Assembly: GCA_004431415.1 (NCBI GenBank)
Contig: QPMI01000200.1
Span: forward strand, 62,001 to 126,000
DNA length: 64,000 bases
Origin: Cyanophora paradoxa CCMP329
Taxonomy: Eukaryota > Plantae > Glaucophyta
Direction of reading: 5' to 3'
In this document: one piece after another, positions 10,737 to 18,100 of the stretch
Layout of the letters: every line of letters starts with the position of its first letter
Position numbering within the stretch: the first letter of the stretch is position 1
Made by a program: the position numbers and the translations under genes
Notes under the pieces: model-generated
Told to the model about the DNA's origin: nothing
The model's input: the letters and a program-made list of their open reading frames with translations, nothing else
Database searches by the model: none

Positions 10737-12262
10737 ATGACGGTCGAGAAGCCGACAATGAAGCCTGCGTCGCCTTGCTTCGGATCGGGCCCCTGCAAGA
10801 AGCGCCCAGGCTACACCGTTCAGGAAGCGCTCAAGGACTGCCCCTTGGGGCGTTCGCATCGCTCGGAGCTCGGTCTTGGCAAAATTAAGAAGGCTATCGA
10901 GGACACGCACAAGCTGCTGGGCCTCCCCGATGACTACGTGGTCGGGATCGTCCCCGCATCGGACACCGGCGCCGTCGAGATGGCGATGTGGTCGATGCTG
11001 GGCCCGCGCCCCGTCGATATCTGTTATTGGGAAGCGTTCGGACAGGGCTGGTACGATGACGCCGTCAAGCAGCTCAAGCTGAAAGACGTCGCCAACGTCA
11101 AGGCGGACTACGGCAAGCTCCCTGACCTCTCCCAGGTCCGCCCCGACCACGACGTGATCTTCACGTGGAACGGCACCACTTCTGGTGTGAAGGTGCAACA
11201 CGCCGTCTGCTATAAGCGCCCGGGCGGCTGATGCGGGCGCGGGCAGGTCCCGAACAGCGAGTTCATTAGCGACAACCGCGAGGGCATCGTCATCTGCGAC
11301 GCCACGTCCGCGATCTTCGCGCAGGTGCGCAGAAGTGCTCGCCACCAAAGTGCGCCTGCGCGACGCCGCGGCGGGGTCTGACCCACTCTTTCCTTTCCCG
11401 CAGGATATGAAGCCTTGGAACAAGCTCGACGTGATCACATACAGCTGGCAAAAGGCGCTTCCTACGTATAATCTCTTTCCGACGAGACTCCGGCGACGCG
11501 CTGCCCGCAGGTCCTTGGGGGGGAGGGTGCTCACGGCGTGATCATCCTGAGCCCGCGCGCCATCCAACGGCTCGAGTCCTACACTCCCTCGTGGCCGATG
11601 CCGAAGGTACTGTCCGGCCGCGCGCACGACGAAGGCCGCGGCGCCGATGGCGGGGCCAGATCTTCCGCATGACGAAGGGCGGGAAGCTGAACCGGGAGAT
11701 TTTCGAGGGCTCGGTGATTAACACGCCCTCGATGATGTGCGTGGAGGACTACCTCGACGCTCTGGAATGGTCCAAGGTCCGCCCCGCTTTCCCTCCCGCC
11801 CGCCGGTTCCGAACCGAGTCGTGCCCGGCAGTCCCTTGGCGGCCTGGACGCGCTGCTGGCCAAGTCGAAGCGCAACTTCGCCGTGCTGGAAAGGTGAGGG
11901 GGGCGTGGGAGGCGGCCGGCTGGGGCCCGACGCGGCGCAGGTTCGTGGCGGAGAATGACTGGATCCACTTCCTGTGCGAGGACCCGGCGATCCGTTCGAA
12001 CACCTCCGTCTGCCTTACCCTCGACCTCCCCGCGGACAAGGCGCGCTCGCTCGCGCGGCGGGGCGGGGTGGGGCGGGGGCGAAGGGGGCGGCAGGTGAAG
12101 CAGCTGCAGAAGCTGCTCTCCTCGGAGAAGGTGGCGTACGACATCGGGAGCTACCGGGACGCGCCGGCCGGCCTTCGTATCTGGTGCGGCTCCACCGTCG
12201 AGGAGGCCGACCTCGAGGCCCTCTGCCCCTGGATCAAGTGGGCCTACCACCAGCTCAAGTGA
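10737..12262 (+). CDS. serC: Phosphoserine aminotransferase, alphaproteobacterial/Methanosarcina-type SerC; 8 exons
   Basis: Clean spliced ORF with [45 protein letters not shown]|VLGGEGAHG (PLP lysine), NTPSM and [17 protein letters not shown]. Seven introns, two of them GC-AG (11455, 12041). Confidence 0.93.
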
Positions 12263-12304
12263 TCGCCCTCGCCCCCAGCCTCCTGTGCGACGCTTCACTT
12301 GGCC

Positions 12305-12366
12305 CTACTGTATTTCAGATATGACTCACACGATATCTGGACTAGCCCAGTAGCTGTTCGGACTAT
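12305..12366. repeat. Dispersed repeat family, short copy A
   Basis: ctactgtatttcagatatgactcacacgatatctggactagcccagtagctgttcggacta matches the start of the copies at 29421 and 48668 and the fragment at 39831. Confidence 0.85.
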
Positions 12367-12444
12367 CCACGGGTGGGGGCGGGACGGGGGGAGGTGGGGG
12401 AAAGCGGAAGAAGGAAAGGGTCTCCGTGTGGCCGTGTGCGTGTG

Positions 12445-14964
12445 CTAGGAGGGTTGAGGGGCGGCGGCAGCAATGATGGCCGCCTCGACGCCAGCGGGGT
12501 CCCCCCCCGCGAGGGCGAGGGCGAGGAAGTCAAGCGAGGGCATCTGCGCCGCGTGCCTCGGCGGGGGCACGGGTGCGCGTGGGGCCGAGGGAGGGCGTCG
12601 CACGACGGGCCGGCCGCGGGCGCGGAGGGCGGCGGCGAGGCGCCGGTCGGAGGTGACGAAGAGGGCGTCGGGCGCGCATCCGCCCCGCGCGATGGCTGTG
12701 AAGAGCTCGTCCGTCGTCCTGTGTTCCGGCTGCGCGAAACTGACCTGCCGCCCCGTCACGCGCCCTCGCGGCGCAGTCGCGGGGTCGGCGGGGCCGCGCC
12801 TGCAGGGAGCCCGGGGCAAGGGCGGGGGCTGTGGCCGGAACGCGCGGCGGGGGCGGAACGCGGCGGTCGAAGACGAGGCGGACGGCGCCGGCAATGCCGA
12901 GCACGGGTGCCCGCCCGCCCCGGTGCCCCCGCAGCGCCCCCGCCAGCGCGGCCTCCGCCTCCGCCGCGTGTCCCAGGAAGACCAGCCGCCGCAGACACCC
13001 GACGCTGCCCTCGCGTCAAACCGGCCTCGCGCCTGCACCCGCGGCGCAGACCAGTGCAGCAGGTTGTTGCCGTCAACGTACGCCAGCGCATACCGCGCCT
13101 CCGCGTGTGGCTGCCCCAGGGCCGGGTTTGTGGACGTCGCTGCTCCGGGGGCGCATTGCTCGGCGTCGTCGACGGCGGCGGCGCGCTCGTGCCGGCCGAT
13201 CTCGTCGCTGTAACTCGCGTCCAGCGCCTCCCCGCCGTCGGGCGCGTGCCGCGGCGCGCGCGGGGTGACCACCTGCGGCTCGTCGAGCGGCGCGCGGGGC
13301 AAGGGGCGGCGGGGCACCTTCGGGTGGGGAAGGGCGGCGGAGAGCAGCGGCCGGTAGCGCTTAGGGAGGGATCCGCGGGCGGCGTGCGCGAGCAGAAAGT
13401 CGCGGAAGAGCAGCTCCGAGAGGAGCGAGTAAGGGGCCCACATGCCGCGCCCTCCCCGGCCTCCCGCCGGCCCCTCCACCCACGCCCCCATCCCCAGCTC
13501 TCGGTACGCCTCCCGCGCCGAGACGCTGCGCCCATGTGGGCGCCCCGGGCGGCGAGGCGGGCCGGGGCGCGCGCCTTCCGAGCCGGAGGGCCGTGGAGAG
13601 CGGGTGGCGCCAGGCGGCGAGGTGAAGGCGCCAGTCGAGCGAGGCGCCCCGGAGGGCCGCGAGCGCGTCGTTCTCAAGCTCCGGCGCCGCCTCGAGGTCC
13701 AGCGCGAAGGGCCCCTCCTGCAAGCCCCTCAGCGCCACGCCCCGGGGCCCCCGTGAGCGCCTCGCACCTCTCCGCGGCCTGCATCGAGAGCGAGCCTCGC
13801 GATCACGTCCGGCCCCGGCAGCGGGCCAAAGTTCGGGGCGGCCGCTGGCGCCCGCACGAAGAGCCGCACAGCGCGACGACTGCGGCCCTCCGCCCCAAAC
13901 GACGCGCGCGGCCGCAGCAGGGACTGCTTGAAGTCCAGGAACGACGCTGGGGGCTGCTACGTGGTGAGGCAGAACCGAGATCGCGCGGCGGCCCGGGAAG
14001 TGCGCGATGGGCAGACCTCGCGAAGCTGGGGGTAGTCGGCAGGGTCGAGCAGCGTCGGCGGCTCGGAGATATTCAGCGCCACTCCGGAGGCTTTCGAAGC
14101 GGCTCGAGCCCGCTCGAGGGTATCGTCAGCGGGCAGCCCTGAGCGCCACGTCGGTGCGTTGAGCAGGGCCGAAGCCAGGGTCGGCGCCTGCTCCCTCACC
14201 GGGAGTTATGTGCACGGACGCGACCGCGCAAGAGGACGATGACGCGAGCATCCGAGGCACCACGTCCCGCGCCGGACCGACTGCCACGACCAGGTCGCTG
14301 CCGCGTTCCCGCAGGCCGCGCTGCAGCGAGCTCACTGCTCTCCTCTGATGCTCGAAGTGATCGAGCTACCGGAAGCGTTCGTCAGGCGCGCGATTTATAT
14401 GTGCTGCAGCAGTAGCCGCACCAGCATGCCCTCCAGATCTTCACGGATACGCGGGAGGGCACGGATTGCTCCTGCTGCCCGCTCGTAAGGTCTGGCGAGA
14501 CTGATCGTCAGGTCTTCCCGCACAATCTAGTTCAACACGCAATGCCTTACCGTGGATCGAAGACGTACACCTGAGCACTCATTCAGCCGGATCGCCGACT
14601 CCTGGTCAAGTCATTGCGCACCGGTACGACGGGCAGCCCAGTTTGAGCAGCGCTGATGAGGGAACTGTTATCTCTCAGCCTGCGCAAGCACGCAATCAGC
14701 TCTGCAGCTCGGCGCCGGAGGGCTTTGCAGCTGGAGCTGGACGATGCACCTCAACAACCCATCGGACACAAGGGCGATCGCACACTTGTCGCTGGCATTA
14801 GCATCGCTTGCTATTGCTCTGATCCGAACCGCGCCTCCGCTGTTACCTCGAGCTCGACACCCGCGGACACGCGGTGTGCTCAACCGCGGTCGCCCAAAAC
14901 GATCGGGTCGAAGAGGCCCTACAGATTTTCGACACGGCGCTGGAAGGCACGCACAGAAATCCAT
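12445..14964 (-). CDS. Photolyase/cryptochrome-like N-terminal region (C-terminally truncated, PHR2-like) fused to a YacP/Rae1-like NYN ribonuclease domain
   Basis: Spliced: DGLLR|[19 protein letters not shown]|VYVFDPR|...[18 protein letters not shown]...LSTALRLG|[11 protein letters not shown]...SELLFRDFL. The same open frame continues into AYVDGNNL, followed by LVFD, TTDE and FVTSDRRL. The start at 14964 is tentative. Confidence 0.78.
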
Positions 14965-15150
14965 CCGATCCAGCGGCGGCGCCGCCGCATGCGCAGCGCA
15001 GCGGCGCTCCTGCCAGCGGCGCTGTCGCCGCGCTGAGCTGTGGGGGGTACAGTCTACTTAGGTTCGCGCGAGACGCTCGCAGGGTTCGGCCCGCAACAGG
15101 AGAAGAGCGGACTCTCAGGCGTTGCATCGCTAGGCTTCAGGGCGTAGAGC

Positions 15151-18100
15151 ATGGCGTCCTCCGCCCCGGTCTTCAAGGGGAAGGGTTCGAGCGAGAGCTT
15201 CAGAGAAAAGGCCAAGGAGACGGTACGCGAGCTCTCCTAGAGCAGGCGACCGGACATGATTTGTCTCACTGCCTGCGGTCGCTTGCAGTCTGTGCGGACA
15301 TCCAACATTGTCGCCGCGAAGGGTCCGCTGGGCCGCGCCGCGCGAGCGCCGCTCCTCTGTTGGCTCTCGACTCATTGCGCCGTGTGTCGCAGCCGTTTCC
15401 GATGCCGTCCGGACGTCGCTCGGGCCAAAGGGAATGGACAAGATGGTGCGCTTCCATTTTTGCAGAGCCGGTCGCCAAGACCCGACATGTGGCCGGCCGA
15501 GCGCTTCTGTCGCACGTTGACACCATTTCCGGATCGCCGCAGGTCCAGACTGGCACTGGCGAGGTCATCATCACGAATGACGGCGCGACCATCTTGAAGC
15601 AGATGGAAGTGCTGCACCCGGCAGCAAAAATGGTGCACTAGCGGCCTGATGTCTTCCGTATTCCGATGATTTGGAGAGTTACTAAGCGCATGTGCAGCTC
15701 GTCGAACTCTCCAAGTCACAGGATGTCGAGGCGGGTGATGGCACTACCAGCGTCGTCGTCATTGCCGGCTCGCTGCTGAACGCTTGTCTTGGTCTCCTTG
15801 AGAAGGGTTCGTCGGCTCGTGGCTCCGTCGCGTACGCGCCGCAGGCGTGGTACTGAGGTCTCGCCAGGCATCCACGCGAGCGTGATCTCGGAGGCCTTTG
15901 GCAAGGCCGCAGATAAGGCGGATCAGATTCTCACTAGCATCGCGCAAAAGGTCGACCTGTCGGACCGCGAATCCCTTCTCAAGAGCGCTTCCACCTCCCT
16001 CAACTCCAAGGTGCGGTCTCGCATGTGTCCGCCTTTACGCCTTTCCCTGCTTCTGGAAGGATGGTAATAAACTATAACTTAAGACGTCCTAGCCACGAGC
16101 TGGTGACACAATGGTTTCACAATTGCTGACCCCAGAACACTCCCCGGAATGCTTTCTCGCTGCCTAGCACGTCGCTTCCTGACCAGCTCTTGTTTTTCTC
16201 CTGGCAGGTCGTGTCCCAGAACTCTGCTCAACTCTCTCCCCTCGCCGTGGACGCCGTTCTGCGCGTCATCGATCCGTCCGCCGCAACGAATGTCGACCTC
16301 CGCGACATCCGGGTGCGCTCCGCACTTCACGGAGCGGGAGCCTGTCTCATGCGAAGCGCGCGCAGATCGTCAAGAAGCTTGGTGGCACGGTCGACGACAC
16401 GGAGCTCGTCGACGGCATTGTCTTCACTCAGAAAGCCAGCCACGCCGCAGGTGCGCCCTCATCCCTGCGCTCCGCCAGCGGCCTGTGCTGCGGCTTCTTC
16501 TTGAATTAGCTAATGTTTGTTTGAATGTCGGTCTGGCCGCGCTAACTTTGGCGCGTGCGCAGGGGGCCCGACTCGAATCCAGAACTGCAAGATCGGCCTC
16601 ATCCAGTTCTGCCTGTCGGCTCCCAAGACCGACGTGCGCACCCGTGAGTACGCCACGGCTGTCCTGCGCTTGACCTCCAGCGACAGATGGAGAACAACGT
16701 CGTGGTGAACGACTATCAGCAGATGGACCGCATCCTTCGGGAAGAGCGGGATTACATCCTGAAGATGTGCAAGAAGATCCAGAAGGCTGGCTGCAACGTC
16801 CTCCTCATCCAGAAGTCGATCCTGCGCGACGCCGTGAACGACTACTCCCTCCACTTCCTCGCCAAGATGAAGGCGCGCCCGGGAGCCCCCGCCGGGAGGG
16901 GAGGCGAGGGCGTCTGAGGCTCGGCGGCGCAGATCGCGGTGGTGAAGGACATCGAGCGGGACGAGATCGAGTTCATTTGCAAGACGCTCGGCTGCCTGCC
17001 GATCGCCTCCATCGACTCGTTCGCCCCGGAGCGCCTCGGCAAGGCTGACCTCTTTGAGGAGGTCTCCACCACCGATGGCAAGATCGTCAAGGCAATTCCC
17101 GCCCTACGCCCATACCCCCGTTCCTCACGCGTCGCAGATCACCGGCGTGCCGAATCCCGGCCGCACTGTCTCCGTCCTCGTCCGGGGCTCGAACAAGCTC
17201 GTGCGACCTCCCCCCCGAGAGCCGTCGTACCGCCCGTGCCGAGCCGGTGCAGATGATCGACGAGGCGGATCGCTCTCTTCACGACGCGCTGTGCGTCATC
17301 CGCTGCCTCGTCAAAAAGCGTTTCCTCGTCGCCGGCGGCGGCGCCCCCGAAATCGAGGCCCGCCTCGTCGCGCGCCCTGTCCCTGCGCCGTGCCGAGCCA
17401 GCTCGCGCAGGTGTCGCAGCAGCTTGCGGAGTGGGCGAAGACCCTACCCGGGATGGAGAGCTTCTGCGTGCGGGCCTTCGCCGACGCGATGGAGATCGGT
17501 GCGCCGCCTCGACCAGCCTGCCCCCGACCCCCTCTAAACGTTGACGCAGTGCCGTACACACTGGCGGAGAACGCCGGTCTGAACCCGATCCAAATAGTCA
17601 CCGAGCTCCGCAACAGGCACATAAACGGCGAGAAGACCGCCGGCATCAACGTCCGCAAGGTCCGCCCCCCAAGCCGCCCCCGTCGAACCCCGCATCTTTT
17701 TATCTGCGGGGCACATTGCTCTTGGTAGCAGTTGGGCTTCCGTTAAATACAGATGCCAAAGCGAGCAAGTGCGGGCTCTGCACGCGGCTCCGCCGGTTCT
17801 TGGCGCCGCGAATGTTTTTCCCGCTTGACAGACCAGCGACCTTGCCCTAGAACTTACCTCCTATCCCCCCGTTTTTTATATCGATGAGCGGTTTTGTCGT
17901 ATTTTTATTTCTACTTCCCTGTGGCGAATCGCATCCGCCCCTTTGGAGTGTGCCCGCTTTTCATCTTACTCGTCTGGCAGGGCTGCATCACGAACATCCT
18001 GGAGGAGAACGTAGTGCAGCCGCTGCTCGTATCCACTAGCGCGATCAAGCTGGCGACCGAGACCGTCCGCATGATCCTTAAGATCGACGACATCGTGAGG

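What the first reader, a model, noticed from the sequence alone, without database searches (positions are those of the whole stretch)
12445..14964. Photolyase/cryptochrome-like domain fused to a YacP/Rae1-like NYN ribonuclease: candidate chromophore- or light-coupled RNase
Seen: spliced exons give the photolyase alpha/beta-domain motifs (LRLRDNxx[19 protein letters not shown]) and helical motifs (LSxxLxLGxVSxR, ELLFRDF at ~13396-13416). The same stop-free frame runs through a linker into VDGNNL (~13060-13077), and later exons give LVFD, TTDE and VTSD. Known: plant PHR2 proteins are photolyase homologues lacking most of the C-terminal FAD-binding region; xDGxN / VFD / T[AT]DE / TSD are the acidic motifs of NYN_YacP, and B. 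subtilis Rae1 (YacP) is a ribosome-dependent mRNA endonuclease. Inference: the C-terminal FAD/repair half has been replaced by a nuclease that keeps its acidic residues, and the Arg-rich N-terminus may be an organellar transit peptide. I do not know this architecture from any characterised protein.
Basis: partly seen in the sequence, partly recalled or inferred. Interest (0 to 1): 0.85.

Follow-up and report, generated by a model that had tools for sequence, protein, structure and literature searches.

The report
Blind photolyase fused to RNA nuclease
One expressed gene of the alga Cyanophora paradoxa joins a truncated DNA-repair (photolyase-family) fold that has almost certainly lost its light-absorbing cofactor to an intact-looking RNA-cutting domain; this pairing was not found elsewhere, and it hints that such 'blind' photolyases work in organelle RNA processing rather than light sensing.

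Summary
The fusion is real; the light-coupling is not supported. RNA contigs from two studies define a 13-exon, 617-aa minus-strand gene (14964-12445) of Cyanophora paradoxa, matching gene model tig00000842_g4843.t1. One contig joins the last photolyase helix to the nuclease and the stop. A ~50-nt G-rich stretch inside exon 9 is unbridged, but it lies between two motifs of one photolyase domain. The N-terminal half is a CRY-DASH/PHR2-type fold cut where plant PHR2 ends. It lacks the flavin-ring motifs and Trp chain and is more eroded than PHR2. The C-terminal domain has no direct Pfam hit, but its relatives are NYN_YacP, its model's best match is Rae1 (Z 11.8, next 5.6), and all four acidic site residues are kept. 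It lacks Rae1's GYN motif and basic C-terminal helices, so it is YacP-like, not a Rae1 orthologue. The leader resembles a cyanelle transit peptide. No second example of the fusion was found. Best reading (0.5): a light-independent organellar endoribonuclease whose dead photolyase fold docks it on RNA or ribosomes. The scan had not noted this before; it noted an analogous RNase III-dead flavoenzyme fusion in this genome (unchecked).

The parts
12376..15021 (-). Transcribed span of the gene (13 exons; CDS 14964-12445, 617 aa); Cyanophora paradoxa tig00000842_g4843
   Evidence: RNA contigs; model; identity with EukProt protein P0001 over 573 aa
14750..14964 (-). Exon 1: putative organellar transit peptide (aa 1 to ~50; Phe3, 12 Lys/Arg, 2 acidic, I-R-A before a possible cleavage) and first strand of the photolyase domain. 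The deposited model splices out aa 5-44; RNA retains them.
   Evidence: cyanelle transit-peptide features from PMC4510345
14622..14679 (-). Exon 2 (photolyase alpha/beta domain, LRDN motif)
14551..14570 (-). Exon 3, 20-nt micro-exon encoding most of the VYVFDP motif
   Evidence: table 5c
14422..14491 (-). Exon 4
14200..14365 (-). Exon 5 ([10 protein letters not shown])
14017..14138 (-). Exon 6 (eroded antenna-site helix)
13768..13953 (-). Exon 7 (end of alpha/beta domain, interdomain linker)
13575..13717 (-). Exon 8 (start of the helical-domain remnant)
13318..13525 (-). Exon 9: helical-domain remnant ending in ELLFRDF plus 26 residues; ends where PHR2 proteins end
13052..13272 (-). Exon 10: ~60-aa acidic, Ala/Pro-rich linker and first NYN strand (VDGNNL; Asp463 at 13074-13072, equivalent to Rae1 Asp7)
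12800..13004 (-). Exon 11: NYN helices and LVFD (Asp516 at 12868-12866, Rae1 Asp53)
12604..12744 (-). Exon 12: TTDE (Asp550 at 12711-12709, Rae1 Asp81) and VTSD (Asp571 at 12648-12646, Rae1 Asp104)
12445..12543 (-). Exon 13 coding part: two C-terminal helices with no basic residue, then stop
13918..14754 (-). Photolyase alpha/beta domain (PF00875, E=1.7e-14; nearest NCBIfam model is DASH TIGR02765, E=1e-8, far below cut-off)
12499..13095 (-). YacP-like NYN (PIN-fold) nuclease domain
14919..14990 (-). Out-of-frame upstream ORF (23 codons, Arg-rich start) inside the RNA leader, overlapping the main ATG
   Evidence: role untested

Best explanation
A single nuclear gene encodes a light-independent, metal-dependent endoribonuclease that most likely works in the cyanelle (plastid). 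SHOWN: one spliced, expressed gene; a CRY-DASH/PHR2-type fold without its FAD half; a YacP-like NYN fold with four aligned Asp residues. INFERRED: (1) the leader imports it into an organelle, plastid more likely than mitochondrion; (2) the four Asp bind a divalent metal and cut RNA, as in Rae1; (3) the chromophore-less photolyase fold is a docking or specificity module that stands in for the basic C-terminal helices this NYN lacks, and brings it to a ribosome or RNA precursor; (4) the fusion arose when a PHR2-like gene, already truncated, was spliced at intron 9 onto a downstream NYN module.
For: One gene. NYN identity: 7 of 8 phmmer relatives are YacP-like and several pass the PF05991 cut-off; their profile hits Rae1 at E=2e-12 with D7/D53/D81/D104 aligned; model pLDDT 81; Foldseek and VIA top hit Rae1, Z 11.8 against 5.6 for the next; D7N D81N is the Rae1 catalytic mutant (PMC10351889). 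No chromophore: motifs absent or eroded. Leader: Phe3 and I-R-A fit cyanelle transit peptides (PMC4510345). Precedents: Arabidopsis PHR2/GERALT is stromal, and its mutant is albino without UV and has lower PEP-dependent transcripts (bioRxiv 2024.08.16.608208); trypanosome mt-SAF35 is a photolyase-fold mitoribosome assembly factor whose knock-down destabilises 9S rRNA (PMC8784144). Intron 9 (phase 0) falls 27 residues after ELLFRD, inside the 21-42 residues at which PHR2 proteins end.
Against: No activity, localisation or substrate data. Only one species carries the fusion in any search, so selection on it could not be tested. The photolyase branch is about ten times longer than PHR2 branches, which also fits decay. 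The leader is Arg-rich and Ser-poor, with Arg at -2, which also fits a mitochondrial presequence. No protein labelled photolyase, cryptochrome, YacP or NYN appears in the supplements of one cyanelle proteome (names only, low-abundance protein). Most of the DASH nucleic-acid groove is in the missing half (own knowledge), so RNA binding by the remnant is not given. The closest eukaryotic NYN relatives carry PB1 or UBA/CUE domains, which points to cytosolic roles.
Confidence: 0.5

Rival explanations
1. Passenger fusion: a PHR2/DASH-like gene and a YacP-like NYN module were joined by chance in a genome rich in domain shuffling. The NYN works alone, or borrows only the transit peptide, and the photolyase part is decaying.
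For: No second example among 1.84 billion representatives or in 55 loci of NYN relatives; very long photolyase branch and loss of residues that PHR2 keeps; ~60-aa low-complexity linker; other readers report several PIN/NYN fusions in this genome (unchecked).
Against: The alpha/beta domain still folds with confidence and keeps the family's core motifs across 8 introns; the frame is open for 617 codons; both halves have independent links to organelle RNA.
Confidence: 0.27
2. One reading: the photolyase half still binds a chromophore (MTHF-type antenna or a loosely held flavin), or pairs with a full-length CRY-DASH, and gates the RNase by light.
For: The alpha/beta (antenna) domain is whole; an acidic pair lies at or next to the DASH Glu-Glu site depending on gap placement; the two residues shared by all family members (Arg of the LRL motif, Ser of the LSPW motif; PMC4564169) are kept; GERALT affects light regulation of POR genes.
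Against: SNRxRQN, DYD, NWGNW and the WxxGxTG Trp are absent; the RN and S-S/T-K phosphate-side residues, the Arg of KTGxxR and four conserved Trp are substituted. An antenna has no acceptor without FAD (established photolyase chemistry). The GERALT authors themselves argue against direct photoreception.
Confidence: 0.1
3. A DNA nuclease for organelle DNA repair: the photolyase remnant finds damaged or single-stranded DNA and the PIN-fold domain incises it.
For: DASH proteins bind single-stranded DNA (PMC4564169); FEN-type 5' nucleases share the fold and rank next after Rae1.
Against: FEN hits are at background level (Z 5.6 or lower); no FEN DNA-binding helix-turn-helix follows the domain; lesion-pocket Trp residues are lost; GERALT does not colocalise with nucleoids.
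Confidence: 0.07
4. Two separate genes merged by annotation.
For: No listed RNA contig spans the whole gene; about 13450-13496 is unbridged in all three RNA runs; the runs are only guessed to be RNA and are kept as contigs.
Against: The gap lies inside one open exon between two motifs of the same photolyase domain; the upstream part has no stop; the downstream contig already joins the photolyase ELLFRDF helix to the NYN; contig depth is similar on both sides; the independent gene model agrees.
Confidence: 0.04

Closest known systems
PPL/PHR2 subfamily (Arabidopsis GERALT At2g47590; Closterium P0026, Chlamydomonas CPH-like P0027, oil palm P0030)
   Same: DASH-derived alpha/beta domain; chain ends shortly after the ELLWRD helix; loss of the Y..RNG motif; lengthened variable loop before that helix; top two pairwise scores; probable plastid location.
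   Different: ppl1-3 motifs not matched; further losses at the antenna and phosphate sites; very long branch; carries a C-terminal NYN domain that none of the three PHR2 has; orthology neither shown nor rejected (AU p 0.44-0.56).
CRY-DASH (Synechocystis 1NP7, Arabidopsis CRY3, TIGR02765)
   Same: Best structural match (Foldseek E=7e-10; VIA Z 19.1) and best NCBIfam model; three-sequence DASH profiles score as well as or better than the PHR2 profile.
   Different: No FAD_binding_7 domain, so no flavin pocket, Trp chain or lesion pocket; 34.5 bits against a cut-off of 317.
Rae1/YacP of Bacillus subtilis (PF05991; 5MQ8/5MQ9)
   Same: Fold, strand order and four acidic site residues.
   Different: GNN instead of GYN; no basic residue in the C-terminal helices; no direct Pfam hit; about 20% identity; fused rather than single-domain; ribosome dependence untested.
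Eukaryotic PB1- or UBA/CUE-coiled-coil-NYN proteins (rotifers and unnamed protists; P0003, P0004, P0009, L007-L063)
   Same: Best sequence hits (32-43% identity); share DGNN, LRR, QPxxRTTD and FVTSDR motifs.
   Different: Other N-terminal domains and no photolyase part; the query falls outside their clade (98/99) and lacks their K-P-x-x-W/F motif.
Trypanosoma mt-SAF35 (7PUA chain Ff)
   Same: Photolyase fold reused in organellar RNA biology.
   Different: Mitoribosome assembly factor of 848 aa; no nuclease domain reported; analogy only.

Membership tests
Photolyase/cryptochrome family (fold) | PF00875 alpha/beta domain above the curated cut-off | tested here: met
   54.5 bits vs 26.6, E=1.7e-14; structure matches
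Photoactive photolyase / cryptochrome | FAD_binding_7 domain with SNRxRQN, DYD and NWGNW motifs and Trp chain | tested here: not met
   No PF03441 hit; all motifs absent, ~190 residues missing relative to DASH
Photoactive photolyase / cryptochrome | Bound chromophore and photocycle | not testable with these tools
   needs spectroscopy
CRY-DASH | TIGR02765 score above cut-off; MTHF-site Glu pair and Arg | tested here: not met
   34.5 vs 317 bits; Arg lost, Glu pair displaced or reduced
PPL/PHR2 | Truncated FAD domain ending just after the ELLWRD helix | tested here: met
   Homology ends at ELLFRD; PHR2 end 21-42 residues after it
PPL/PHR2 | Motifs ppl1, ppl2, ppl3 (PMC9498864) | tested here: not met
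   Only the PVYxFDPR core of ppl1 is present; ppl2 and ppl3 positions differ
PPL/PHR2 | Phylogenetic grouping with plant and green-algal PHR2 | tested here: inconclusive
   Long branch, unresolved; AU p=0.44 and 0.56; grouping with an algal DASH equally not rejected, p=0.54; no red-algal or other glaucophyte sequences available
PIN-like superfamily, NYN/YacP-like fold | Fold and at least four acidic active-site residues | tested here: met
NYN_YacP / Rae1 sensu stricto | PF05991 hit | tested here: not met
   No hit at E<=10; 6 of 7 aligned relatives do hit
NYN_YacP / Rae1 sensu stricto | GYN after the first Asp (PMC5499597) | tested here: not met
   GNN
NYN_YacP / Rae1 sensu stricto | Two C-terminal helices with conserved basic residues (PMC5499597) | tested here: not met
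   Helices predicted but no Lys/Arg in the last 32 residues
NYN_YacP / Rae1 sensu stricto | Translation-dependent mRNA cleavage on the ribosome | not testable with these tools
   needs in vitro translation assay
Eukaryotic PB1/UBA-NYN family | Nesting within the clade; PB1 or UBA/CUE domain | tested here: not met
   Outside the clade at 98/99 (only three bacterial rows, no cyanobacterial or plant YacP); no such domain
Cyanelle-targeted proteins | Phe in the first 10 residues; V/I-x-A or Arg at the cleavage site; about 60 residues | tested here: inconclusive
   Phe3, I-R-A at 48-50 and ~50 aa fit; Arg-rich, Ser-poor make-up also fits mitochondria; no predictor or import assay available

The most novel reading that the evidence does not exclude
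The protein is a light- or ligand-gated plastid ribonuclease: its intact antenna domain binds a non-canonical chromophore or docks on a full-length CRY-DASH and switches the NYN nuclease on plastid mRNA or rRNA. This would be the first cryptochrome-family effector with a built-in enzyme acting on RNA, and it would point to the role of plant PHR2/GERALT.
Probability: 0.1. Interest if true: 0.85.

Novelty: new variant of a known kind. Interest (0 to 1): 0.52.

Why it matters
Plant PHR2/GERALT is needed for chloroplast greening, yet its biochemistry is unknown and it has lost the machinery of DNA repair and photoreception. A PHR2-like fold fused to an RNase in a glaucophyte gives a concrete, testable lead: truncated photolyases may be docking modules in plastid RNA processing or ribosome biogenesis, as mt-SAF35 is in trypanosome mitochondria. 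The lead rests on one species and on unproven orthology, so it suggests an experiment (RNA and ribosome binding, rRNA maturation in geralt) rather than settling the question. It also gives Cyanophora a candidate plastid RNase that annotation misses twice: Pfam does not see the NYN domain, and the gene model cuts out most of the transit peptide.

Tried and rejected
Pfam, NCBIfam and PDB sequence searches of the NYN part alone: no hit. P0002 (5486-aa Ig-like protein) rejected as a low-complexity match to the Pro/Ala loop. Word-based homologue searches with residues 66-427 of the long ORF and 20-340 of P0001 returned only the gene itself (candidate cap reached). Genome-contig scan found only class I-type photolyases through a chance peptide; used as outgroups. 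A mixed two-domain alignment (A3) misaligned, so no full-length model was made and domain contacts are untested. No photolyase gene beside four short bacterial NYN loci, and no NYN beside a shortened bacterial DASH, so no operon origin is shown. No NYN relatives in viral contigs or plasmids. No second copy of either domain in the window. Repeats in the locus are chance GC-rich matches. No paper holds photolyase + fused + NYN domain + nuclease. The primary Rae1 papers were not held, so Rae1 numbering comes from the 5MQ8 alignment and PMC10351889. Trees could not place either domain.
Full report
Verdict. The proposed light coupling is not supported by the sequence. I rate it a new variant of known kinds, interest 0.52.

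Source and gene structure. The window is from Cyanophora paradoxa. Contigs of three runs guessed to be RNA (two studies) and one DNA-like run were laid on 11900-15600. The RNA runs show joints for nine introns directly and a micro-exon (14570-14551) that defines two more; intron 1 follows from contig coordinates. The DNA run shows none of the listed intron joints. The resulting model has 12 introns of 45-70 nt (ten GT-AG, two GC-AG) and is open for 617 codons, 14964 to 12445 on the minus strand. It equals the deposited protein over the last 573 residues. The deposited model removes residues 5-44 as an intron, which two RNA runs retain.

One transcript or two. Contig X1-2 runs from about 13440 to 12376 and carries ELLFRDF, the linker, the whole NYN domain and the stop; run X5 has a contig with 133 nt upstream of intron 9 as well. 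Contig X2-15 runs from 15021 to about 13500. About 50 nt (13450-13496, estimated from bin depths) are unbridged in all three runs; they are a run of G-rich sequence inside exon 9. The gap lies between the LGxVSAR motif and ELLFRD, which align co-linearly with the helical domain of DASH and PHR2 in a profile built without the query (hhalign E=3e-4; score above all 500 shuffles). The upstream part has no stop. A split there is unlikely (0.04) but only a long read closes it. Contig depth is 4-9 against 150-480 for both neighbours; contigs cannot rank expression, so this is only a hint of a low level.

The photolyase half. PF00875 hits at E=1.7e-14; PF03441 does not hit. The nearest NCBIfam model is DASH, far below cut-off. 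The nearest proteins are PHR2-type sequences from Closterium, Chlamydomonas and oil palm, and DASH proteins. The ESM Atlas lists ~320-350-aa truncated photolyase clusters, bacterial and streptophyte, at 0.94-0.95. The model (pLDDT 66, higher in the alpha/beta domain) matches Synechocystis DASH best; its alignment was DASH-rich, so this ranking is not independent. Homology stops at the ELLFRD helix, where PHR2 proteins end (21-42 residues after it) and about 190 residues before DASH proteins end. The missing part holds SNRxRQN, DYD, NWGNW and WxxGxTG, which by established photolyase structure supply the flavin-ring contacts, the D-R bridge and the Trp chain. The remnant has also lost residues that DASH and mostly PHR2 keep: the Arg of KTGxxR, the S-S/C-K before LSPW, and four conserved Trp; the Glu pair of the MTHF site (cry3 Glu149 is essential, PMC4831468) is displaced or reduced to Asp depending on gap placement. 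The PPL motifs of PMC9498864 are not met. Trees give a branch about ten times longer than PHR2's and cannot choose between PHR2 and DASH (AU p 0.44-0.56). It is PHR2-like in architecture; membership is not shown.

The nuclease half. A phmmer scan of 1.84 billion representatives gave seven real relatives at E 1e-5 to 3e-4; six of them hit PF05991, four of these above cut-off. A profile of their alignment with the query hits B. subtilis Rae1/YacP at E=2e-12 and lines up Asp463, Asp516, Asp550 and Asp571 with Rae1 Asp7, Asp53, Asp81 and Asp104; D7N D81N is the Rae1 catalytic mutant (PMC10351889). The model is confident (pLDDT 81). Its best matches are Rae1 by Foldseek (E=1.8e-4) and by an independent structural scan (Z 11.8, rmsd 3.3 over 126 residues; next 5.6). 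Two features that define NYN_YacP in PMC5499597 fail: GYN is GNN, and the last 32 residues have no Lys or Arg. The closest sequences belong to a eukaryotic family with PB1 or UBA/CUE domains and coiled coils, from rotifers and unnamed protists. In a tree the query lies between that family and three bacterial YacP-like proteins, outside both, and profiles of the two groups score it alike. No cyanobacterial or plant YacP could be fetched, so a plastid origin is untested.

The leader. Residues 1 to about 50 have Phe at position 3, 12 Lys/Arg, 2 acidic residues and I-R-A before the first conserved element. Cyanelle transit peptides carry Phe in the first ten residues, have a median length of 63, and favour Val, Ala and Arg at -3 to -1 (PMC4510345). 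An Arg-rich, Ser-poor leader with Arg at -2 also suits mitochondria, so I put plastid at about 0.55-0.6 (judgement). A name search of that proteome's supplements found nothing. An out-of-frame 23-codon uORF starts at 14990 inside the RNA leader and overlaps the main ATG.

Distribution. No other photolyase-NYN fusion appeared: none among the phmmer hits, none among 19 photolyase relatives by their Pfam lists, none in 55 loci of NYN relatives, and no paper. These searches are single-sequence or word-based and can miss a diverged orthologue in another glaucophyte or a red alga. All sequencing runs listed carry one organism label, and the DNA run showed no differences, so selection could not be measured.

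How it most likely works. Shown: a single gene, both folds, the four acidic residues, and the absence of the FAD half. Inferred: organellar import; metal-dependent RNA cleavage; and a role for the dead photolyase fold as a docking module that replaces the basic helices this NYN lacks. Two published cases make this plausible. Arabidopsis PHR2/GERALT is stromal, does not colocalise with nucleoids, and its mutant is albino without UV, with lower PEP-dependent transcripts; the authors argue against repair or direct photoreception (bioRxiv 2024.08.16.608208). Trypanosome mt-SAF35 is a photolyase-fold assembly factor of the small mitoribosomal subunit (PMC8784144). Intron 9, phase 0, lies 27 residues after ELLFRD, within the range where PHR2 proteins stop, so the nuclease was probably appended to an already truncated gene (inference). 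Confidence 0.5. Rivals: a passenger fusion with a decaying photolyase part (0.27), light or chromophore gating (0.10), a DNA-repair nuclease (0.07), two genes (0.04).

Earlier notes and limits. The scan had no note on a photolyase in this genome. It lists other PIN/NYN fusions and an RNase III joined to an eroded acyl-CoA dehydrogenase fold, a parallel I did not check. My joined spliced model was kept inside scripts and never sent to a search tool; the joined search step was left out, and searches used exon or ORF references and the tool-returned P0001. No full-length structure was predicted because the mixed alignment failed.

Noticed in passing
window 14964-15221: Head-to-head with a TCP-1/CCT chaperonin gene (delta-like, + strand, ATG ~15151): RNA contig ends at 15021 (-) and ~15049 (+) are about 30 bp apart, which suggests a very compact bidirectional promoter.
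   Followed up: partly
window 10737-12376: Downstream neighbour on + looks like a phosphoserine aminotransferase (recognised from motifs, not confirmed by a family hit); its RNA ends at 12352, 24 nt from this gene's RNA end at 12376. It has a GC-AG intron at about 12041-12094.
   Followed up: partly
window 14919-14990 (-): Out-of-frame uORF of 23 codons with five Arg after Met, overlapping the main start; could damp translation.
   Followed up: no
window 14833-14952 (-), approximate: The deposited gene model splices out 40 codons of the putative transit peptide; RNA contigs of two runs retain them, so the public protein is probably wrong at its N-terminus.
   Followed up: yes
L007-L063 (e.g. 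L041:91-1197, L045:410-1600, L048:1556-2959, L051:646-2523): A widespread eukaryotic family of PB1- or UBA/CUE-coiled-coil-NYN proteins (rotifers, protists) that Pfam mostly misses; four acidic residues kept. Looks like a ubiquitin-linked RNase family; I did not check whether it has been described.
   Followed up: partly
ESM Atlas clusters; L068:6001-7197: Bacterial DASH-like proteins truncated at ~320 aa (Verrucomicrobiota) or ~398 aa exist, so PHR2-like truncation may have arisen more than once or before plants.
   Followed up: partly
window 14551-14570 (-): A 20-nt micro-exon encodes the best-conserved photolyase motif; two of the 12 introns use GC donors (13574, 12799).
   Followed up: yes
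window 12308-12363: A short stretch between the two 3' ends attracts several other DNA contigs at high summed depth, suggesting a small dispersed repeat.
   Followed up: no
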